DNA of 62,432 bases from Aplysia californica (taxonomy: Eukaryota): contig NW_004797725.1 in NCBI RefSeq assembly GCF_000002075.1, forward strand, positions 298,527-360,958, read 5' to 3'. Positions within the stretch are counted from its first letter, which is position 1. Every line of letters starts with the position of its first letter. A program made the position numbers and the translations under genes. This document shows, piece after piece, positions 12,207-25,838 of the stretch. Under the pieces are notes generated by a model. That model worked only from the letters and a program-made list of their open reading frames with translations. It searched no databases and was not told the origin of the DNA.

Positions 12207-13060
12207 NNNNNNNNNNNNNNNNNNNNNNNNNNNNNNNNNNNNNNNNNNNNNNNNNNNNNNNNNNNNNNNNNNNNNNNNNNNNNNNNNNNNNNNNNNNNNN
12301 NNNNNNGGGGGGGGCGGGGGTCTCTCAGTCTGATGATCACTGAGTGACTCGACAGCAGGCCGTCTTGGTACTTCACGGACAGCAATCCCTTCGTGGAGCC
12401 TGGCAAGGGCTCGTCCCCTGTCGACGTTGCTCAGACGTCTTCTTGAAAGTTCTTGGAGGCATTGTTAAAAATCGCTTAATGTGACCGCATTAAATGCCCC
12501 TAACACCGTCAAACTCACTAAGGCATTAGTGTAGGAAGCGTGAATTCCCCTGAGTTGGTTTTTAACCCACACCACTCACTGAAAATCACGTGAGTGATTG
12601 TCAAATACAGTTTCGATTTTACGGGAAATTATCCCCCCTTTCACCCTGTCTAGGCAGCGTAAATTAACCGACATGTGTCAAACCTGTTCATTATTGTAAA
12701 TATCGATGACCCTTCCTTACAATGACATAAACTCAGTCACCTAACTTCTCAATATTTGTTTGTCACACAGTCTCAACATACTATAGTGAAAACTGTAGTG
12801 ATCCCTAACTTGCTTTGAGTAGTACTAGTAGGCCTCTATATAATTTGGAATATCATTACATGTATAATCTTTGTGTCCTACCTTTAATTAACTGCAGGGG
12901 AGCTTTCTGAACTCATCTCTTTGGAGTCTTTGTGTATAATCGGAACTGTCCAAAAGCTCCTTATTGTGCATCAAGCTGAACTTATCTAATAAATCTTACT
13001 GGTCTTCTTCTGATATTGGCTGATTCATGTTCATTCCCTTTTCATCGTGGGTGGTTGTAG

Positions 13061-13104
13061 CAAAGATTCTCTACTAGTTTACTGCATGTAGTAGAGAATC
13101 TTTG
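13061..13104. mobile_element. 44-bp ultra-short palindromic MITE, P-element-like
   Basis: 16-bp perfect TIR CAAAGATTCTCTACTA/TAGTAGAGAATCTTTG. 7-bp TSD GTTGTAG at 13054-13060 and 13105-13111. Confidence 0.75.
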
Positions 13105-13744
13105 GTTGTAGGGCGCTTCCACAGTGGATCCTACATTTCTTTCCCAGTCTTTTCTGTTTGCCTTACTTTTCACACGCTTTAAATAGCCATTATTGTGTTT
13201 CAATGAGTTTCTCTCCACTCAAGGTCCAGTTTTCCTTTATCATTTCAGTGTCATTATCATCAGTGAGCAAGCCTATACAACTGGTGGTTTTCTCTCCCCC
13301 CCCCGAATCTATCTCTTCTTTGTTATTTCTTGGCAATTGCCCATTTGTTTGAGCACGTTGTAGGCCTAGACATACCTCAATGGGGTCTTCCAGTACTTGT
13401 ACTTCCACGTAATTTTGTGCGTTCTTTACTCATGCTCTCATGCTAAAAGAAGTACTAGAGTCTGTACGTAGAAGTTAATTAAAAACCCTTTCCCATGACA
13501 ATTAGAAGACTTGAGTTTGATTTCTGAATGGGGAAGTTAAAAAAAAACAAAAAACATGTAGGCCTATCTATTAATATTAAAACGTGTAGGCTGTCTTCCA
13601 GAAAGATGAATGGTCTACAAGAAGAATACCCGAGCACGACTGTATGAATACCTACTATAAAAACCCTCTTTTTTACTACATTTTGTATAAACCTCCATTA
13701 TGGACTCGGGGATTTGTAAGAGATCGGACTCGGGGATTTATGGA

Positions 13745-13782
<38 letters not shown>

Positions 13783-16700
13783 NNNNNNNNNNNNNNNNNN
13801 NNNNNNNNNNNNNNNNNNNNNNNNNNNNNNNNNNNNNNNNNNNNNNNNNNNNNNNNNNNNNNNNNNNNNNNNNNNNNNNNNNNNNNNNNNNNNNNNNNNN
13901 NNNNNNNNNNNNNNNNNNNNNNNNNNNNNNNNNNNNNNNNNNNNNNNNNNNNNNNNNNNNNNNNNNNNNNNNNNNNNNNNNNNNNNNNNNNNNNNNNNNN
14001 NNNNNNNNNNNNNNNNNNNNNNNNNNNNNNNNNNNNNNGGGGGGTTCAAAGGCCCAGCCGGTGGGATCAAAGTAAAATTTCAAAGATCGCTTGTCCTATC
14101 GGCAAGCAGTGGTCAAAACTTCACACCTCTCAATTGCTATCCTGTCTGATAATGACATGCGTCAGTCTTACTTATCCAATTACCACCAGTGCTTGCTTTT
14201 CACAGGACCACTGTTTGACCTATTAAAAACAGAAACATTTGAACATCTCCATTACTTCCACCCTTAGCCCCACCCACTGGTGTAACAAGCACAGTCAACC
14301 AATGCCATCCCTCACTGCCATCATGTAATTGTTAACAACGATTCGAGGAACTCTTTTCTCGGCTGGTCGTACGATCAGGGTGGCAGGCATTGGTCAAACT
14401 AATTTCACACCTCTGGCTTCTGGCTACCCAGGAAAGTTTGCGTAGTGGCTCGCTACTCCAGCACTCTCATGGGCAGTAGTGAGATTTCCCATCCACACTA
14501 CACTGCTGACCATCTGCATCGCTCAGGGCTCACATGAGGGGTAACATCCATCCCCAAATTGCACCCATACTCCCCTTCCTCGCCCGCGGCATGGTCATAG
14601 CGTTAAGTTTAGAGCCGGCGGAACCAAACTTGCAAGATTTGTTTCAAATCAGGGCTGAACTGCCAAAGCATTTTCCGTCTTAGACAGGTGAAACCCTCGG
14701 AAGGGAGCGGATTTTTCTTTCCGTTCCCGCGTTGGACAGGTTTCCGTTTTATACAGGTAATTAAAGAGGAAATATCAAGGGGGGAGCGGGGAGATTCCGT
14801 TAATGGAGGTTTCCGTTAAGGCAGGTTCGACTGTAGGCTACTTACCAGCCCCGTTTCTTCTGTTGGCACGTGAGCTTAACAAGTTTCAAACAACTTATAC
14901 TGTCACATGTTCTATGTTTTCCCAATTCTATCAGTGTAGGCCTACACATTAATCAGAGACCTAGCAATTTGTTTACATTGCAAGATCTCTGCATTAATCC
15001 AGGAAGAACCCCCACCCCCCTTCCCAATACCTAGACTCTACTAATACTAATACTTCCAAAAGTATACTCAAGTCATAGATCATATAGATAGAAGGCATAG
15101 ATCTATCAACCACTGTTGAAAAGGATTCCGTTTTGCTACATTGGGGCTCCTGATCTTGTTTCCAAAGTGACTTTCACCATTGAAAGATGCTGAAGTCAAA
15201 TGCCCCTTTTCGCTTCGACTTACTCACTTAGAACATGAGTAGGCCTCTATAAGTTCGTTTGAAACAGACTGGGTCCGCGCTTGAAAGAGGGTATTTTTTT
15301 TTGTCGTTGCGTGGGACTTTAGTGGGAGCAAAGTTTAGGTGGCTGATTGACGACAGCGCTCCGTTTTTCTGTTGCTGGAAAGGTAGGCCTATCTCTTGCT
15401 TACAGAGAATTGAAACTAAACACTGTAGTAGTATACATCACGTACATTAGTGGGCTACATTGTTCTAGTAGTAAGGCACCTTCCTTGATAACGAAAGACT
15501 GTCACTCAAGAGCAACAAAGCCTCGTGAATGTCCATGTCCATGCTCTTGAAAGTGCACCTGTGCAGGAGGAGAGTCCCAGTCGTCCTACATTTTAAAACT
15601 TTGTTGTTGTTTTTTTTTCAGCCCCTCCCTTCACATTCACACTACACCTATATCAGCACACTCTCCCCCTCCTTCTTTCTTTCCCCCAAGAGGATGCGTA
15701 CGAATGTGTCACATCTTCCACACCCACGCCACGCCTCAACATTTATAGTTTCAACAGCACTAGATTCTAGTAGTAACACACGTATATGATATTATGTAGC
15801 CTACATGATGACGTGTCTAAATAAAGAGTAGGACCTCCGTATAAAAAATCAATTTCTGGATGCGGAATGGAAACCAAAGAAAACTCTTACATGATGTACC
15901 ATAAAGCCTATACTTTGAACACTGACTGATGGTCACAGATAATGCGCTCTGCACGGTATCAACAGCAGTGGCAACAATAAAGCCACCAGTAACATCAAAT
16001 TAATTACTACATGTAACATCCAAATTGCTCACAGACTCACAGTCACAGCTACTGTTGAAATAGGATTCTGAGATTTAAAAGTAAAAGAAAAAAAACTCTT
16101 TACTTACTTTGCACTCAGAAAACATAGAGCTACCCCCCCCCCCCCCGTTTTTTCAGTGCAGTATAGAATATTATCCACTTTCGTAGGAACAATCATANNN
16201 NNNNNNNNNNNNNNNNNNNNNNNNNNNNNNNNNNNNNNNNNNNNNNNNNNNNNNNNNNNNNNNNNNNNNNNNNNNNNNNNNNNNNNNNNNNNNNNNNNNN
16301 NNNNNNNNNNNNNNNNNNNNNNNNNNNNNNNNNNNNNNNNNNNNNNNNNNNNNNNNNNNNNNNNNNNNNNNNNNNNNNNNAGGGTTGTTGGCAGAGTTAG
16401 CATATATTTATATATATATAGAATTTATATGTTGTATCATGCATCTCCCCTCGACTCTCAATAACGGCAACAGAGGATGAAAAGTAAAGAGAAAGGAAGA
16501 ACTATGAGGGCAGAACTACTATGTCAAAGTGTGATAGTTGCTAAGGTCGGCTCACAATTTAATTGACCACCAAAATAGCAGTTCGTGATGTGGTCTCAAT
16601 GTAAATATTGAAATGTTCCCAATGATTGAAAGACATATTCTGTGATGATGAAAGGATGCTTATGAACTCAAAAGTGTTCTTCAGTTTAAGTTTTATAGCA

Positions 16701-17507: not shown

Positions 17508-18112
17508 TTAACCCATCGTCATGACATTAATAAAACATTTTTACAAAGGCAGACAGCTTAGATTTCGCTGTAAAATAATTTTAACAATTCCGTACACACG
17601 AAAGTACGAAAAAGCAGAAAGCAAACACTTAGCAAACAGGTCTGCATTTTCATTTTTCCACACTTACTTTCATTCTATCTAGCACTTCTCAGACAGGGAG
17701 ATTATATATACAATTTACCAGTCATTCATTCTACCATCATCTGCTAATAAAAATACTAAAGTACCGTTCTAATCACACTAGATAAGAGGTACATAATGCA
17801 TAAACATGACATTGATACCAACAGGAATTATTTTATGAGCTCTGTTTCCATTTTTCACTTCCTTCCTGGGTTAGTTTTTCATTTCCACAGAGCAAAGGTG
17901 TGTCATCACACTGACAGGCTTTGCAGCCCACCGAAGAAAATTATGGCGGGTCTACACATTGTCAACTGTCACGGGTAATCTTTCTTTACAGTAGTGAGCA
18001 AATGAGACTAGTGACATCCATACACCTAGGCTTTCCTTCCTGCTATGAAGATAAGATTATAGGCCTACCGTACTTAGGCAAAATAATTCAGACTCACAGA
18101 TGTTCAAAAGGC

Positions 18113-18285
18113 CTATGAATTGTTATTTGATCCTTTGGTATTGTAGTACACTCCAGCCAACATAGCAAACACAGCAAAAGCTTGACCACCAACTCGAAGA
18201 CGCATTAACAGTTGTGTTTTCTTGGCATTCCCTGTTCGCAATGTTGACAAGCCCATTCCTAGGACAACAGTAGTAAAAACGACAC
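18113..18285 (-). CDS. HIGD2A: HIG1 domain family member 2A, exon 2
   Basis: Acceptor ttcctttctCAG. Translates (G)VVFTTVVLGMGLSTLRTGNAKKTQLLMRLRVGGQAFAVFAMLAGVYYNTKGSNNNS*, with the HIG1 QxxMRxRVxxQ motif and two TM helices. Absent from the ORF track. Confidence 0.93.
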
Positions 18286-19082
18286 CTGAGAAAGGAAAAA
18301 AATAAATTTGAATTTTAAATGCTAGAAAAAAATTAACTGCTTTGCATAGATCTTAATGTCTCTATGAGAAAAAACTATCATATTGGCAGAAGTGCAATGT
18401 TATCTATGTTAAAATCAATGGCCTAAAATCGAGTTGTTTTCAAAATGGTGAAGCAATCCCAACCGGTTACTTAATCACACAAAGAGCCAGTCGGGAAACC
18501 AACAATAGCTGCCAGGTATGCTGATGATCCTCAGTGGGAATGACAATACATAGAATTTTTTTTTTTTTAAACCCAGAAGACCACTAAACCCAAAGAATAA
18601 ACAGAATCGACCCCCCCCCCCCCCCCACATCCCTTTTCTCCCTATCACTCAGGGAAGGAAAAATTAACAGCTAATCAATCATTTCACATTGGCTTAAATT
18701 CTTAGATCATTATTTATCATGGGGTCACAAAATTAGGGCAGATGAGCCAGTACGGCCCACAAGCAGGGGCGGTTCGTGGGTCTAAAAAGTGGGCGTGCAC
18801 AATTAAGCTATCTTAGGCTGAAGATAATCAAGGGCAGAGTAAATGGGATGGTGTATAATTTTAGGATCTTTGGGTTGGTGAAGGAACACCTTGNNNNNNN
18901 NNNNNNNNNNNNNNNNNNNNNNNNNNNNNNNNNNNNNNNNNNNNNNNNNNNNNNNNNNNNNNNNNNNNNNNNNNNNNNNNNNNNNNNNNNNNNTTTTTTT
19001 TAGTACAAGCTGCTATGTACAGCTCATCCAAGTAGGAGAATGTAGATGTTGTTGGAATTTATGATGTCCTTATTGTTTTCAG

Positions 19083-19163
19083 ATCATTGGGTCCCTCCGT
19101 CATCTCTTCATCCCTGTATTCTTCAACTGCCTGCTTGCCAAAACTGCCATGCAGAATATGTTT
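19083..19163 (+). CDS. KCNT1: KCNT/Slo2 (Slack/Slick) Na+-activated K+ channel, S4-region exon
   Basis: ttgttttcAG ... |GTAAGT. 81 nt, phase 0/0: IIGSLRHLFIPVFFNCLLAKTAMQNMF, matching the KCNT motif LRNLFIPVFLNCWLAKxALENM (recalled, not searched). Confidence 0.85.
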
Positions 19164-19429
19164 GTAAGTTCTTAGCTTTTGTTTCCACAAGGTTCAAAGT
19201 GTTATGCCAAGAATGTGAACTGCAAAATTTAAGTATCTACATCCTGAAAAGTGCTGCGACTATTTTTAGTGGATGTAAATGCTAGTACAGAGTGGAGTAG
19301 ATGTCCATGATCGCCCACGCCAGTCGGCAAGGCACCGGATAATGATGATGGAATGCAAGTACAGCTGAACCTGATGAAGACTATCATCCATTGTTGAGGA
19401 GAAAAGTAGTCATCTGAGACAGGTTTTGT

Positions 19430-19605
19430 TTAGTTAGTAAGAGTTTAACAGCAATTGCAACACAATAAGGCCATATATGTGCCGAAGATTAGAGGTGTTA
19501 CGAGAGAGTAACAAACATAAAAAGGAAGGAGGAGAGATCAGGACGACAGATGTTTGGTAAGAAAGAAGGAGCAAACCACACCAGAGCACCCGCTAACCAC
19601 CCATA
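19430..19605 (-). mobile_element. ~185-bp retroposon family B (no tRNA head, LINE-like 3' tail); other copies ~22835-22890, 23085-23225, 25756-26732 (split), 28505-28676, 39525-39698, 40590-40780, 47505-47687, 59595-59765
   Basis: Recurrent sequence. On - it starts GTGGGTGGTTGGCGGG and ends GGCGCTCATATGACCTTATGCAGTTGCGAGCGCCGTAAAACC plus a short-repeat tail. TSDs visible at two copies. Confidence 0.8.
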
Positions 19606-20575
19606 CTGAGACAGGTGACCCTCAAGAAGAATTAATGTCTTAAGCTAATGGACTCCTGACCCCGATATAATGAGGTGCAGCTAAAATGGTCGCTTTTAGC
19701 ATAAGGGAGCTATCCTGATGCTGTTTTGAGAAAATCGAAGGTTAAGTTTTTGCCCCTAGCCTTGTTCAGTTTTTTAAAAAGACAAAGAGCACTTCTCCTA
19801 TTGGTAGGGTAATTCACACTTTTAGTGTGGGTCAAAATCTGGGTAGCCCGCTTGTCCATAAAAGCGACCAAATTATGTCCTTGCCCCGAGACCTGGATAT
19901 TTCAGGGTTTGGGGTAACCTTTTTTTCCCACGCATCTACCCAGAAGTAGACAGACAAACAGGTTGACACACCAAACAGCAGTATTGGAGATAGGAGGGTG
20001 GGAACAAATTTATTACTTTATGTGTTTTGCAGGAGTACTTATGCAATACTAACTAGCATGCCTGCTTTTCTTGAATTTTTCTTGAAAACTCGGGGGTGGG
20101 GGGGGAGAGTGGTTTTTAGGCCAGGGAGTCTAGCGTTCGTTGGGTTTTCATTGTTCTCCCCATACTTAACTTGGTCTTTTTGCAGGAGGATTTGAAACTG
20201 TTAGGCCACACCTTTTAACTCTTTGAAGACGTAGCGCCCACATAATTCTGTCCGACCATCAGCACATAAAAGGCAATGTTGCTGCACTTTCGAAATCATC
20301 ATGCACAAATCAGAGACTTGAGCTTTTCATTCTTTTTTTTTTTTTTTTGCTTTCCTCATTAAAGTTGTAGACAACTGCAAAAGAATCGAAAAATCTACAC
20401 GAATAACGAAGTTATGGATCTTTTTGAGAAAAAAAACACTTCAAAACAGCACGTCCCCATTTGTCAAGTGGTGTTGAACACATACAATCATCAGACTACA
20501 GCCTGAAATCTTTTTTTTTAAAATTAACCTAGCATTTAATCACTTTTTTATGACTTTTTAATACCTTTTTCTCAG

Positions 20576-20670
20576 AATGACCTTCATCGGGTGATGCAGA
20601 AGTCCCAGTCTGCCCTCGCTCAACAGCTGTTGGTCCTGGGTGCTACCATAGGCTGCCTCGTCTTCATTGG
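20576..20670 (+). CDS. KCNT1: KCNT/Slo2 K+ channel, S4-S5 linker/S5 exon
   Basis: tttttctcAG ... GG|GTGAGT. 95 nt: NDLHRVMQKSQSALAQQLLVLGATIGCLVFIG, matching invertebrate Slo2 NDLHRAMQKSQSALSQQL..L..CLVF. In frame with the previous exon. Confidence 0.87.
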
Positions 20671-22189
20671 GTGAGTCAGAGTTTGACAGAGTAATTGTGA
20701 GGCATCGGAGTGAAATCAGGCGCTCGTCAAAATAACAAAATTGGAGCAACAGGCATTTTCCCACCAGTTTCGCAATTTTAATCTTATTTTTTTTTTGGTC
20801 CAACCCTTTTATGTCCAAATAAAAACACATTTCCATGTGAATTATATTAAAAAGCGTTGAATAAAAACTCCAAATATGTAATTTTTCAGATTTCAAGGAC
20901 TCTTTAGCTAATTAAGTTACCAAACTTTTGTGGCCATTTTCTCGCTATTTTTACCGCTGAAACCAAGTGAACTTATCTCTTTCAATCACAAATATCTTCA
21001 CTTTTTCTCAAGATAGATAGGTATTTTTTTCATCAAAAGCAAGAAAAATTAACAAGCTTTGAGATAATACCAATAACTCTACATGCACAAAAAATTGACG
21101 TGCGCCCGATTCCGCCACGTGGTGACACAATTGTNNNNNNNNNNNNNNNNNNNNNNNNNNNNNNNNNNNNNNNNNNNNNNNNNNNNNNNNNNNNNNNNNN
21201 NNNNNNNNNNNNNNNNNNNNNNNNNNNNNNNNNNNNNNNNNNNNNNNNNNNNNNNNNNNNNNNNNNNNNNNNNNNNNNNNNNNNNNNNNNNNNNNNNNNN
21301 NNNNTCTAAAAAGTGGGCGTGCACAATTGAGCTTTCTTAGACTGAAGATAATCAAGGGCAGAGTAAATGGGATGGTGAATAATTTTAGGATCTTTGGGTC
21401 GGTGCAGGAAGAACTAGTGCTTTTATTTTCATTCTTTTTACTTGTGGCTTTGACTTCTAGAACTAAATCTGTTTGTTAGCTAAACTTCAATTTCATTCAT
21501 CCTGCATTAGAACTGAACACTCAAGTAATACCTTTCACCACTCCACTACAAAACCGTTCAAAAGCACAACTCATAGGACGGTGACTTAAGTATGTCACGT
21601 TTACCTCCCTCAGGTTCACGGTCACAGAGTCACTTAAAATAGCGACAAGACAATGAACCAATCACAATTCTCTTGAGCACTCCGCTGGATTGCTCCGGGG
21701 CCCACATAATTTTGGCATGGAATAGTGCACAGTCTATGGTGTTTATTTTTAGATTGCCTACCATGGGCTATGTTTCGACGCTATGCAGCAAGAGCACATT
21801 TGAGATGTGCCGTCTTATTAATATTAATGTACCGCCAAACTCACTACAAGTGTCGTCATCGCTTGGGTTATCCCAAAGAGCCATTTATAGGTCAGGTTTC
21901 CACTGTTGACTATCCTGTTATGTTTAGATACAGCGCATGAACTTAGGAATGGCATAGTAGATTTTTACGACGCTATAGAATAGAAATGACAGTTACAGCG
22001 CCAGCGAGGGCCTTGTTTTGATCTAATATTTGGCTAGTGTTTGTTCCTGGCGTCTTTTATTCTATTATTGTGGGTGCTTTACGTCATAGAACATTAAAAC
22101 ATTGTGGGCAGCACTGCACGACCGTGCTCTATGGACGAACCGCCCTGATGATGATGATGATGACGACGACGATGATGATGATGACAATG

Positions 22190-22515
22190 ATAATAATAGA
22201 TCTTGTTTAGCGCAAATCCCAGCTCAACAGCAAGCTCTATGCGCTTCACAATCTATACTATTACCCCAGAAGACCTGGGAGCATTCTGAAATAACCTCAA
22301 CTTCCTGGAAGCTGCAAACAGCCTTTTATAAGCACTAAAACTCTAACATACTGACATGATCTTTCGCTGTTTATGGCCAAGTACCTATTTTCACCTGGGT
22401 GAAGTGAGGAAAATTCGTGTACAGTACCTTTCCCAAGGACACAACGTCGGGCCCGCGGCTGGCGGGAACCCCCGAACCCACAGCCTCACGATTACGAGAC
22501 CGGTAGCCTAACCAC
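22190..22515 (-). mobile_element. tRNA-derived SINE with conserved core and L2-type tail; a second SINE head starts on + at ~22518
   Basis: On -: tRNA-like head (GGTTAGGCT...GGGTTCG), core GTGTCCTTGGGAAAG...TTCACCCAGGTG, tail TGTGAAGCGCATAGAGC...ATTATTAT next to a (GAT)n tract at 22147-22195. Confidence 0.6.
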
Positions 22516-22663
22516 ATCGTTGGTCTAGTGGTTAGACTGCTGGTCTCACAACCAAAAGGCTGTNNNNNNNNNNNNNNNNNNNNNNNNNNNNNNNNNNNNN
22601 NNNNNNNNNNNNNNNNNNNNNNNNNNNNNNNNNNNNNNNNNNNNNNNNNNNNNNNNNNNNNNN

Positions 22664-22822
22664 GGGTGTACCATCTGCTGTCTGATGTGACGGACAGTGC
22701 AGGTTCGAGTTGCCACGGCTGTTCTGGTTATAGCCCGGTCCTCTCGTCGTGTGGTGCACGTGGCGGTCCGGATCTTTTTCGCTCAACAGCAGTTCCAGTT
22801 GCAGCAACCTGGTCTCTCAGTC
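22664..22822 (-). mobile_element. Tc1-type transposase HTH fragment, frameshifted
   Basis: Translates LRDQVAATGTAVERKRSGPPR / TTRREDRAITRTAVATRTCTVRHIRQQM, matching the Tc1 pattern TG..DRxRSGRPRxTTxREDR. Confidence 0.65.
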
Positions 22823-23920
22823 TTTTAGCTTTTAGTTTTAGTAGAGGGTTTTACGGCGCTCGCAACTGCATAAGGCCTTCTTATGAGCGCCAAGGGGTGG
22901 GTGTCAACAAATCTTTACAGGGAATCAGACACTTTGCTCACCTTTCTAGATTCTACAGCACAAAGTCTGCTTTGACTATCAAGGCACCCCGGAAATAGCA
23001 GGTCACAAGAGTGATAAACACACAAAAGAAGTAGAGGAAAATGACAATAGTAAGGATTAGGAAGTTGTTGTGTTTTTGTTTTTTGTTTTTAAGTGTTTTA
23101 CGGCACTTGCAACATAATAAGGTCATATAAGTGCCGAAGATCAGAGGTGTTACAAGAGAATAACAAACATAAAAAAAGAAGAAGGGGAGATAAGGACGAT
23201 AGATGTTTGATAGGAAAGAAGAAGTAAAAAAAAAAAAACAAACTTGGAAGATGTGTCTGTAGTGGTCTCAAGACTTGGTCCCCAATATAATTTTGTCATT
23301 TCATTGAACTCTTCACTGAAATTTAAGAAGCTTTTATAGACTTCATAACTTATTCATAACTTATGAACAACATCTCATTATAATTTTCTTGCCTATGACT
23401 ATGAAACTTCAATTATTAGACATCTAAAGTAAAACTATGTCATGACAACAATAAATTCATAAGAGTCACGACGCGGTGGAACAAGGCACTCGTCAATTTT
23501 TTATCATGAGGAGTTATTGGTATTATCTAAAAGTTTGTTCATTTGCCTTGTTTTTGATGAATAAAAAATACCCCTGATTGAAGAAGGTGGCGGTCATCAG
23601 GTTCAGAGGTAAAGTTAGCAAGAAATTTTGACCACTGCTCGCTGACCGGACAAGCAACCCTTGATCCCACCGGCTGGGCCTCTGAACCCCCCCCCCCCCC
23701 CCCCTTTCCATCTCCCCCTAAAATCCTGCCTAAGACGGAAAATGTCTAAAACTGAATTTTCTTCTCTCTGGCTCCCTTGCGATTCCGTCTTACACAGGTT
23801 CAACGTATATTATGAGGCAGAGTGGTGAACTAAGGCGCTCTTAAATGAAAGAAATCTGCATTTATTTTTGGGCCGACTGGCAATTAAAAAAAAATTGGGG
23901 GGCTTAACACCTTTTAAATA

Positions 23921-24737
23921 CAGTCCGTGCTGGCTATAAGCACGCCGGCTTAAAGCACGTTTTGGACTTAAGCACGCTAAACGGCTCTTACCGAATTTTT
24001 GCTATATATGAATTACACGCCTTTAAGCACGTTAACTTTGGCTTTAGGCACGCTTCATTACAACAACAAGACAGTCAATACTTTCACATTGACCCATCGA
24101 AGTTCGAACACAGTCTACACCGCAGCAGTGGAGTGTGATAAGAGAAACACAGAGAACGCAAGTGATGCCAGTGATGGAGACACACACTCACATGGGCGGA
24201 GAGGAAGGCAGAGAGATGCACACAGCCACGCGCGTGGACATAGGATCTAGCCTAGGGCAAAGTTACACACAGACTGAAAAATACAAAGAGAGTCGGGGAG
24301 ACGAGAAAGGGCGGCTGGCTGCGATTTCACCTTTGACCCTCGCTATACTATCCATTAATCCTGATTGTGTATCACGCACGAGGTGGGATGAAGGCGGTGG
24401 TATGAATGTGGCACAGCGGGCAGTGGTACGCACAGGCAGCGTGTAGGCCTAGTGTGCTGTATGGTGACTGGCTGTCTAAATTAAGTTTTCATTTCCCATT
24501 CGACCACAAAACAAAAACAAACAAGCAAACAAAAACTACCATGGCGGGTAAAAATACCAGTGCACACTTTTGCAGGACCGCTATAGTATAGGCCTACTTA
24601 CAAACAAAGGGAAATAGCACGCGAAATTTTCTACCTGAAAATCTCTGGATTATGTCTACTTCGCACTCAAGCACGCTTCGGATTTAAGCACGCTTATGCT
24701 TTCTCCCGATGACTGTGCTTAAAGCCGGCATGGACTG
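23921..24737. mobile_element. pogo/Tigger-like MITE nested in a family-A MITE
   Basis: TIR CAGTCCGTGCTGGCTATAAGCAC / GTGCTTAAAGCCGGCATGGACTG, TA on both sides, subterminal TTAAGCACG repeats. Confidence 0.8.
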
Positions 24738-25438
24738 TACCCATTTAAGAACGTTTTTTGTGTGGATTTTACTGAAAAACATTGATTAGGCACAAAAAAT
24801 GTAAATTTTCAGTTTCCAAGGACTCTCAGGCTATAGAAGTTACCACTTTGGCAGCCATTTTCTCGCTTATTTTACCTCTGAAACCAGGCGACCCTTACCT
24901 ACTTCAATTGCAAATATTTCGACTTCTATTCAACATACATGGATATATTTTTTTTTCACCAAAAGGAAGGCAAATGAACAGGTTTTACTCTGGTTTTAAG
25001 ATGATACCAATAGCCCCATATAATATGCCCAAAAATTGACGAGCGCCTGATTCCACCACATCGTGACACATATATAAAATATCTGGTCTATTTTTAGAGT
25101 CATGACGTACAATGAGGGGGTAGCAAGTATATGATGCCATATATTTGCTTAATTGTATAAGACTAAAGCCACCAAGTTCCGAATGTATGAAAGAATGTCA
25201 AATACAATGAATGAAGATTACATGATAGGCGACTCATGCCACTGGCTAGCCATGTTACTGAGAGTAAAAAATTTGTCATGCTGACGGTTCCCTATTTGGG
25301 TTACGACGGGCTGGGAGAGTTAATTCTAGTATCACTGAGCATGGATGGGGTACAGAATATATCAGTAGCAATCAACTCACTGCATACATACTGATCTCTC
25401 GAAGTAGAAAGGCAGTTAAAGGAAGAAAGGTTGTTGGG

Positions 25439-25476
<38 letters not shown>

Positions 25477-25838
25477 CTTATTTATATAATCATATGATTA
25501 GCTGACATTCTGACAAATAACTGTCAGCGGTTTATGAAAGTCTGAATGATATGAAGTCTATCCCACTGGAGAACCTTACCGGTGCATTTTTCTGTAACTC
25601 ATCCCATTACGACAAGGAAAACAACTTTTATTTAGTGGAAGACTCTGAGTCAACTGAGTGAGCGGGATGGAGGACGGAAAAGTAATCATACAAGGGTAGA
25701 TAAGAACCGAAGGGTAAGATTTGATTCCGTGCGTGTGGTGGCTGAACCAAGTTGTTGGTTTAGTTTTAGAAGAGGTTTTACGGCGCTCGCAACTGCACAA
25801 GGTCATATGAGCGCCAGAAGATTAGAGCTGTTACAAGA

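What the first reader, a model, noticed from the sequence alone, without database searches (positions are those of the whole stretch)
19083..20670. Two intact KCNT/Slo2 potassium-channel exons antisense inside the HIGD2A intron
Seen: two + strand exons with canonical splice sites splice to IIGSLRHLFIPVFFNCLLAKTAMQNMF-NDLHRVMQKSQSALAQQLLVLGATIGCLVFIG, the S4 to S5 region of Slack/Slick channels, within the single 13.5-kb intron of - strand HIGD2A. I found no preceding exon and no pore exon (TFSTVGYGD) elsewhere in the window. Possibilities: (a) a very large KCNT gene interleaved with HIGD2A, which would also have to contain same-strand genes; (b) a duplicated or TE-captured channel fragment; (c) a misplaced contig. 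If real, a hypoxia/respiratory-supercomplex gene interleaved with a metabolically sensitive K+ channel is notable.
Basis: partly seen in the sequence, partly recalled or inferred. Interest (0 to 1): 0.75.

Follow-up and report, generated by a model that had tools for sequence, protein, structure and literature searches.

The report
Misplaced duplicate contig carrying potassium-channel exons
The two potassium-channel exons are real, but they sit in a small gap-bounded piece of assembly that duplicates part of the true channel gene on another scaffold, so the "channel exons inside a hypoxia gene's intron" are most likely an assembly artefact and not biology.

Summary
Observation confirmed. Window 19083-19163 and 20576-20670 (+) are two canonical-splice exons matching consecutive KCNT1/Slack residues (S4 to S5). 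In the assembly they lie in the 13,549-nt intron of a minus-strand HIGD2A-like gene.

The interpretation as biology is not supported. The exons sit in a 3.57-kb block (18994-22563) bounded on both sides by 100-N gaps. The block is colinear and 96-97% identical to G000:C824:289317-292904. There the same two exons are contiguous with the preceding channel exons and are followed by 15 more matches running through the RCK region (Pfam BK_channel_a included). Scaffold C455 has no other channel exon.

No contig in three DNA runs joins HIGD2A-intron sequence to the block. Block-like sequence has about single-copy depth (0.85-1.07 of the flanks). Sites that distinguish the two assembly copies are mixed differently in different animals. 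The left contig ends in a high-copy transposon of the family that the block also carries, a plausible cause of mis-scaffolding.

Best reading (0.85): an uncollapsed alternative haplotype of the channel locus, mis-scaffolded. Main rival (about 0.08): a real recent or polymorphic 3.6-kb duplication. Low interest.

The parts
19083..19163 (+). KCNT/Slo2-type exon (S4 and S4-S5 linker region), 27 codons, phase 0 at both ends
   Evidence: PDB phmmer hits KCNT1 only, E 3e-4, 5u70 residues 210-231. DNA identical to the C824 copy.
20576..20670 (+). KCNT/Slo2-type exon (S5 region), 31 codons plus 2 nt
   Evidence: PDB phmmer hits KCNT1 only, E 1.2e-4, 5u70 residues 233-264. 77% identical to P0026 residues 203-232. 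One synonymous difference from the C824 copy, at 20659.
18994..21134 (+). First contig of the redundant block; twin of G000:C824:290748-292904 (minus strand)
   Evidence: 97% identity over the full length. 48 substitutions and 18 indel columns in 2158 columns.
21135..21304 (.). 170-N run inside the block; its length equals the 170-bp spacing between the two matched stretches on C824
   Evidence: The letters were not looked up.
21305..22563 (+). Second contig of the block; twin of G000:C824:289317-290577 (minus strand). About 21305-22150 is a copy of a high-copy transposon.
   Evidence: 96% identity over the full length to C824 only; at least 38 other loci match only the first ~845 nt at 93-95%.
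18894..18993 (.). 100-N scaffold gap, left edge of the block
22564..22663 (.). 100-N scaffold gap, right edge of the block
18757..18893 (+). Start of an independent copy of the same transposon family, at the end of the HIGD2A-intron contig; the likely false link to the block
   Evidence: At least 39 other loci at 95-98%. 93% identical to 21305-21415. The junction contig in X5 (18612-18793) has single-copy depth 40.6.
20693..21134 (+). ~440-bp dispersed repeat inside the block
   Evidence: At least 38 other loci at 84-88%.
19176..19963 (.). Very high-copy repeats in the intron between the two exons
   Evidence: Word depth 6e3 to 1.8e6. Direct-repeat family D2, 19424-19523 and 23076-23175.
18113..18285 (-). 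HIGD2A-like exon 2 (HIG_1_N domain, stop at 18113-18115)
31835..32000 (-). HIGD2A-like exon 1 CDS (ATG at 32000, donor GT at 31834-31833)

Best explanation
The block 18994-22563 is most likely an uncollapsed alternative haplotype (a short 'haplotig', here two contigs) of the real KCNT/Slo2-type channel gene on scaffold C824. The scaffolder dropped it into a gap in the HIGD2A-like intron on scaffold C455. Shown: the exons are genuine KCNT exons. The block is a colinear 96-97% twin of C824:289317-292904. On C824 these exons are physically contiguous with the preceding exons and in order with the following ones. Both edges of the block are N gaps. The C824-side left boundary abuts a dispersed repeat. 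The HIGD2A-intron contig ends in a high-copy transposon of the family the block also carries. Block-like sequence has about single-copy depth in three DNA runs. Inferred: read pairs anchored in transposon copies caused the wrong placement. In the animal the HIGD2A intron therefore holds a transposon copy and no channel exons, and is about 3.8 kb shorter than the assembly shows apart from the unassembled remainder of the transposon. Nothing functional follows: the exons work only as part of the C824 gene.
For: Twin elsewhere: the full-length matches are self plus C824 only. The 170-N run equals the C824 spacing. True locus: P0026, which carries Slo-like_RCK, BK_channel_a and Ion_trans_2, gives 21 colinear HSPs on C824 from q23 to q1171, with q170-202 and q203-232 being the two exons. 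16 of the 33 genome matches are on C824 and 1 is on C455. BK_channel_a exons lie at C824 279-280 kb. C824 287856-301525 has no N. Allele-like divergence: there are 48 substitutions and 18 indel columns in 2158 columns. Exon 1 is identical and exon 2 has one synonymous change. Other animals differ from the window by 0.8-1.9% in the flank and 1.6-3.3% in the block (table 8; my arithmetic), which is the same range. No junction: no listed contig in X1, X5 or X6 links unique intron sequence to the block (table 8). Depth: block pieces against flanks are X1 14.5/14.1/9.9/8.85/10.9 against 11.9 and 9.92; X5 49.4/44.4/36.6 against 52.8 and 45; X6 40.7/20.2/32.2 against 39.8 and 33.2. The ratios of means are 1.07, 0.89 and 0.85. 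Two loci would give about 1.4-2 by my rough estimate. Mixed haplotypes: X1 is C824-type at 19256, 19287, 19920 and 19937 but window-type across 20211-20659. X5 and X6 are C824-type at 19256, 20494 and 20532, window-type at 19287, and share a variant (19247) found in neither assembly copy. Control: 0 of 2 other gap-bounded contigs of the window (12307-13782, 14039-16197) have a full-length twin.
Against: The DNA runs are Logan contigs, which drop variant paths. One contig per place is therefore weak evidence, and the depth is a contig-wide mean. X1, probably the assembly's own sample, has only about 12x depth, and one block piece lies at 1.2x of the flank. A heterozygous extra copy in that one animal is therefore not excluded. 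No long read or read pair was seen spanning 18.6-23.3 kb. The reason for the scaffolder's placement is inferred. The C824 flanks of the block have no second copy, so the supposed haplotig is very short. That fits a short-read assembly but equally fits a small real duplication.
Confidence: 0.85

Rival explanations
1. A real, recent 3.6-kb segmental duplication of part of the KCNT locus (two exons plus intronic repeats) into the HIGD2A intron. It could be fixed, or polymorphic and heterozygous in the sequenced animal. It would be a non-functional gene fragment antisense to HIGD2A.
For: Two copies exist in the assembly at 96-97%. The duplication is limited to the block, whose C824-side left boundary abuts a dispersed repeat. 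X1 depth (0.74-1.22 of the flank) does not exclude one extra heterozygous copy.
Against: Neither junction exists as sequence; both are N gaps. No listed contig bridges them. In X5 and X6 block-like depth is 0.5-1.0 of single copy with one contig per place, so a fixed duplication is unlikely. The exons carry 1 synonymous change in 176 nt against 47 substitutions in about 1965 non-exon nt, which suggests both copies are under the same constraint, although the difference is not significant.
Confidence: 0.08
2. Transposon-mediated capture or transduction: the ~860-bp element carried flanking KCNT sequence into the HIGD2A intron.
For: The block contains a copy of a young, high-copy element, and the intron contig ends in another copy of it.
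Against: The block extends on both sides of its element: 2.3 kb upstream and 416 bp downstream, all colinear with C824. The intron's element copy is a different copy, 93% identical to the block's but 98% identical to many others. No target-site or junction sequence exists. Depth is single-copy.
Confidence: 0.03
3. A very large KCNT gene whose exons are interleaved with HIGD2A and neighbouring genes.
For: Only the intact exons with canonical splice sites on the + strand.
Against: Scaffold C455 has no other KCNT exon. C824 carries the same exons on one uninterrupted contig together with the preceding exons q49-179, and in order with 15 downstream matches.
Confidence: 0.01

Closest known systems
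Uncollapsed haplotypes (haplotigs, artefactual duplications) in assemblies of heterozygous genomes, as targeted by purge_haplotigs, purge_dups and HaploMerger2
   Same: A second copy at allelic-level divergence, bounded by contig ends, with depth that sums to one locus. Passages of PMC8178825 describe such artefactual duplications and the half-coverage criterion.
   Different: That paper treats long-read contigs left as separate sequences. Here a very short alternative contig pair was also inserted into the wrong scaffold, apparently through a repeat. I could not measure half-coverage directly because only popped-bubble contigs were available.
KCNT1/Slack (Slo2.2) sodium-activated K+ channel
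   Same: The two exons align to consecutive KCNT1 residues 210-264 of chicken Slo2.2. The full gene on C824 has the RCK/BK_channel_a exons. A review notes that Slack S4 lacks charged residues and that a native Slack current was studied in Aplysia bag cell neurons (PMC3850776, passages).
   Different: The window copy is only 2 exons with no pore and no RCK domains, so it is not a gene. The exon 1 peptide does contain R, H and K residues. Which residues form S4 was not mapped here.
HIGD2A / Rcf1 (HIG1 type 2) respiratory supercomplex factor
   Same: The host gene has a HIG_1_N domain and, by eye, a Q-x3-R-x-R-x3-Q stretch (QLLMRLRVGGQ). That motif is recalled from memory as typical of type 2.
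   Different: Nothing unusual apart from the intron being inflated by the misplaced block.

Membership tests
KCNT/Slo2 channel (the exons as sequence) | Specific similarity of the S4-S5 region to KCNT1, in consecutive order | tested here: met
   the significant PDB hits are KCNT1 only, residues 210-231 and 233-264 of 5u70. P0026 q170-202 and q203-232.
KCNT/Slo2 channel (window copy as a gene) | Pore and tandem RCK/BK_channel_a exons on the same scaffold and strand | tested here: not met
   no further KCNT exon on C455 or in the window; no BK_channel_a match on C455.
KCNT/Slo2 channel (C824 gene) | Colinear exons covering the transmembrane part and the RCK domains | tested here: met
   21 colinear HSPs from q23 to q1171. 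BK_channel_a at 54.3 and 38.7 bits.
KCNT/Slo2 channel (C824 gene) | Pore exon with a K+ selectivity filter | tested here: inconclusive
   q233-294 was not found on C824. A 1598-N run (286258-287855) lies where it is expected.
KCNT/Slo2 channel | Na+-activated K+ current | not testable with these tools
   Needs electrophysiology.
Mis-scaffolded uncollapsed haplotype | Full-length near-identical twin at the true locus, at allelic-range divergence | tested here: met
   The allelic range between animals comes, table 8.
Mis-scaffolded uncollapsed haplotype | No sequence-level junction with the host locus | tested here: met
   100-N gaps on both sides. No bridging contig among those listed.
Mis-scaffolded uncollapsed haplotype | The two copies together have single-locus read depth | tested here: met
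   ratios of means 1.07, 0.89 and 0.85 to the flanks. Caveat: these are contig mean word depths, and X1 is only about 12x.
Mis-scaffolded uncollapsed haplotype | Sites distinguishing the copies segregate as alleles in other individuals | tested here: inconclusive
   mixed haplotypes in X1, X5 and X6, but Logan contigs pop bubbles and may mix paths.
Mis-scaffolded uncollapsed haplotype | Long reads or PCR span the host locus without the block | not testable with these tools
Real segmental duplication | Doubled depth, or both variants present in every individual | tested here: not met
   one contig per place. In 0 of 33 cells (11 listed unique-region sites x 3 DNA runs) are both letters seen.
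HIGD2A (HIG1 family) | HIG_1_N domain | tested here: met

The most novel reading that the evidence does not exclude
The block is a real, very recent and possibly polymorphic 3.6-kb duplication of the S4-S5 exons of the Slack-type channel gene into the HIGD2A intron of the sequenced animal. That would place intact, splice-competent channel exons antisense to a respiratory-supercomplex gene, where they could yield antisense or chimeric transcripts.
Probability: 0.08. Interest if true: 0.3.

Novelty: not a real feature. Interest (0 to 1): 0.07.

Why it matters
The finding matters mainly as a caution. In this gap-rich short-read scaffold assembly, an exon fragment of one gene inside another gene's intron can be a redundant allelic contig put in the wrong gap. 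Gene models, copy-number counts and 'nested gene' claims around window 18.9-22.7 kb should ignore the block. The real Slack-type gene should be annotated on C824, where its pore exon appears to be missing from the assembled letters. If the minority reading (a real duplication) held, it would be a minor example of a young gene fragment nested antisense in an intron.

Tried and rejected
1. A Pfam scan of each exon peptive gave no family (0 families for the 27-aa and 32-aa pieces). The PDB sequence search was informative instead.

2. phmmer of exon 2 against 1.84 billion representatives gave 34 hits. Most were fragments of 63-406 aa. One 1221-aa hit (P0009, 6 stretches, 54% identity) was not used. 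Only P0026 (1407 aa) was used as a full-length Slo2-type protein.

3. RNA evidence was uninformative. X21 (polyA, single-end) has 0 depth in the bin holding exon 1 (18979-19175). The depth in the bin holding exon 2 is confounded by the adjoining repeat. X21 reads pile up only at 17600-17796, to the 3' side of the HIGD2A stop codon, so the library looks 3'-biased. No statement on expression or on splice partners of the channel exons can be made.

4. I rejected it as evidence because it is the in-register continuation of a multi-copy transposon.

5. I looked for a second allelic contig of the HIGD2A intron, or of the C824 flanks, elsewhere in the assembly. None was found; only repeats matched.

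6. A tRNA-derived SINE check of 18400-23600 found 0 genes.

7. Searches of earlier scan notes for haplotype or misassembly notes found nothing (one search returned an error because the word occurs in no finding).

8. Supplementary files of papers were not consulted.

9. The two exons were always searched separately. The joined (spliced) peptide was never built or searched.

Full report
**What is there.**
- The + strand of the window carries two short exons with canonical splice signals.
- Exon 1: AG at 19081-19082, coding 19083-19163 (27 codons, IIGSLRHLFIPVFFNCLLAKTAMQNMF), then GTAAGT.
- Exon 2: AG at 20574-20575, coding 20576-20670 (NDLHRVMQKSQSALAQQLLVLGATIGCLVFIG with the next base), then GTGAGT.
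- I searched each exon on its own against all PDB chain sequences. Each hits only KCNT1 (Slack/Slo2.2) significantly.
  - Exon 1 matches residues 210-231 of chicken Slo2.2 (5u70), E 3e-4.
  - Exon 2 matches residues 233-264, E 1.2e-4.
- Two consecutive stretches of one protein, in the right order and splice phase, are far more than chance.

- A HIG_1_N exon lies on the minus strand at 18113-18285.
- Its first coding exon lies at 31835-32000, with donor GTATGT.
- The intron between them (18286-31834) is 13,549 nt.

**What surrounds the exons.**
- The exons lie on a 2141-nt contig (18994-21134) between a 100-N run (18894-18993) and a 170-N run (21135-21304).
- The next contig (21305-22563) ends at another 100-N run (22564-22663).
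- The first contig has exactly one other full-length match in the window's own genome: G000:C824:290748-292904, minus strand, 97%.
- A local blastn shows that the second contig continues the same colinear match: 21305-22563 equals C824:290577-289317 at 96.2%.
- The 170-N run is exactly as long as the 170-bp spacing between the two matches on C824.
- I did not look at the letters under the N run.
- The whole gap-bounded block 18994-22563 is thus a twin of C824:289317-292904.

**Where the real gene is.**
- BK_channel_a (PF03493) exons lie on C824, minus strand, at 279-280 kb.
- phmmer of exon 2 against 1.84 billion representatives returned 34 hits, mostly fragments.
- One hit, P0026 (1407 aa), carries Slo-like_RCK, BK_channel_a and Ion_trans_2.
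- Genome-wide, P0026 gives 33 matches: 16 on C824, 8 each on C137 and C84 (other Slo-family loci), and 1 on C455, which is exon 2 of the finding.
- A local tblastn gives 21 colinear HSPs on C824 from q23 (323.9 kb) to q1171 (252.3 kb).
  - q49-75 lies at 298.1 kb, q112-152 at 294.7 kb and q138-179 at 293.9 kb.
  - q170-202 lies at 292.8 kb (exon 1) and q203-232 at 291.3 kb (exon 2).
  - q295-350 follows at 285.2 kb, and the series continues from there.
- The window has only the two exons plus two non-colinear noise hits (E 0.14 and 0.23).
- C824 has no N between 287856 and 301525. There the two exons are physically contiguous with the three preceding exons.
The true locus has its own copy.

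**Nature of the two copies.**
- The first contig differs from its C824 twin at 66 of 2158 alignment columns: 48 substitutions and 18 indel columns.
- Exon 1 is identical in DNA. Exon 2 has one synonymous C/T difference, at 20659.
- The C824 flanks of the block (292905-296400 and 287856-289316) have no second copy in the assembly.
- C824 292905-293319, directly next to the block's left boundary, is a dispersed repeat with at least 39 copies.
- The block itself carries several repeats:
  - a ~440-bp repeat at 20693-21134 (at least 38 copies at 84-88%);
  - an ~845-nt young element at 21305 to about 22150 (at least 38 copies at 93-95%);
  - very high-copy repeats at 19176-19963.
- The HIGD2A-intron contig ends (18757-18893) in the first ~135 nt of that same young element family (at least 39 copies at 95-98%).
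- That end is a different copy from the block's element: 93% identical to it, against 98% to many others.
- This explains the 111-nt direct repeat across the gaps.
- As a control, 0 of 2 other gap-bounded contigs of this window (12307-13782, 14039-16197) have a full-length twin elsewhere. The block is the exception here, not the rule.

**Reads.** I laid three DNA-type runs and one RNA run on 17600-23500.

| Run | Nature |
|---|---|
| X1 | Logan contigs, probably the assembly's own sample |
| X5, X6 | Logan contigs from other animals |
| X21 | polyA RNA, raw reads |

1. No listed contig joins unique intron sequence to the block.
   - Contigs stop at 18611-18626.
   - In X5 a single-copy contig (depth 40.6) runs 18612-18793 into the transposon start. 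The transposon insertion in the intron is therefore real.
2. Block-like sequence has about single-copy depth.
   - Everything at least 95% alike is laid, so the C824 copy is included.

   | Run | Block pieces | Flanks | Ratio of means (my arithmetic) |
   |---|---|---|---|
   | X1 | 14.5, 14.1, 9.9, 8.85, 10.9 | 11.9, 9.92 | 1.07 |
   | X5 | 49.4, 44.4, 36.6 | 52.8, 45 | 0.89 |
   | X6 | 40.7, 20.2, 32.2 | 39.8, 33.2 | 0.85 |

   - With 31-letter words and 3% divergence, I estimate about 0.7-1.0 for one locus and about 1.4-2 for two loci.
3. The sites that distinguish the two assembly copies are mixed among runs.
   - X1 is C824-type at 19256, 19287, 19920 and 19937, but window-type at all substitution sites from 20211 to 20659.
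   - X5 and X6 are C824-type at 19256, 20494 and 20532 and window-type at 19287.
   - X5 and X6 share 19247 A>C, which neither assembly copy has.
   - At the 11 listed sites in unique parts of the block, 0 of 33 run-by-site cells show both letters.
4. Other animals differ from the window by 0.8-1.9% in the flank contig and 1.6-3.3% in the block. A 3% difference is therefore within the allelic range of this species.
5. The joins 18885 to 21417 and 18892 to 21417 exist in all three DNA runs, and in 4 RNA reads.
   - They are offset by exactly the repeat register (2524).
   - Their depths are 180-870, with one X1 contig at 19.9.
   - They are transposon reads and not a locus-specific junction.
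6. RNA says nothing about the channel exons.
   - Depth is 0 in the exon 1 bin.
   - The library looks 3'-biased.

**Caveats.**
- Logan contigs drop variant paths, and their depth is a contig-wide mean.
- X1 is shallow, and one block piece lies at 1.2x of the flank.
- A heterozygous extra copy in the sequenced animal alone cannot be excluded.
- 54 further difference rows and most contig pieces were not shown.

**Conclusion.**
- The most likely explanation (0.85) is an uncollapsed alternative haplotype of the C824 channel locus. The assembler broke it off near repeats, and the scaffolder put it into the transposon-caused gap of the HIGD2A intron.
- The mechanism of misplacement, through read pairs in transposon copies, is inferred and not shown.
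- A real small duplication keeps about 0.08, transposon capture about 0.03 and an interleaved giant gene about 0.01.
- This kind of artefact is well described. Passages of PMC8178825 discuss artefactual duplications from uncollapsed haplotypes and the coverage criterion.
- The gene family is well known too. Passages of the review PMC3850776 report a native Slack current in Aplysia bag cell neurons.
I did not test that.
- The other papers were seen only as search listings.
- There is nothing novel here. The value of the result is that the block should be ignored in annotation and that the channel gene belongs on C824.

Noticed in passing
G000:C824:285265-291202 (loci L014, L015): The real Slack-type gene on C824 has no detectable pore exon (P0026 q233-294). 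A 1598-N run (286258-287855) lies exactly where it should be. The only pore-exon matches in the genome are those of the paralogous loci on C137 and C84. The gene model there will be incomplete.
   Followed up: partly
G000:C137:325-365 kb, C84:1042-1080 kb, C259:328-329 kb: There are further Slo-family loci. C137 and C84 each give 8 colinear matches to the Slo2-type protein, including pore and RCK exons. C259 has BK_channel_a exons only in my searches.
   Followed up: no
window 18757-18893 and 21305-22150: A young, high-copy ~860-nt element. At least 38 copies at 93-98% identity were scored out of thousands of first-look candidates. Its class was not determined, and no tRNA-like head was found.
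   Followed up: partly
window 19373-19766 and 22722-23312: Extremely abundant short repeats, with word depth up to 1e6 and above. They are also the most RNA-covered parts of the stretch in X21 (50-150 reads deep on both strands), with polyT/polyA-like loose ends at 22839-22847. They look like transcribed SINE-like elements.
   Followed up: no
window 21135-21304: The 170-N run has exactly the length of the corresponding spacing on C824. It may be a size-estimated gap or a deliberate mask. The letters were not looked up.
   Followed up: no
window 17600-17796 (-) and 18113-18285 (-): X21 polyA reads cover only the stretch to the 3' side of the HIGD2A-like stop codon (depth 9). The coding exon has about 0 depth. 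Exon 2 contains QLLMRLRVGGQ, which fits the Q-x3-R-x-R-x3-Q motif that I recall for type-2 HIG1 proteins. A second HIG_1_N gene lies at G000:C73:1867816-1867968.
   Followed up: no
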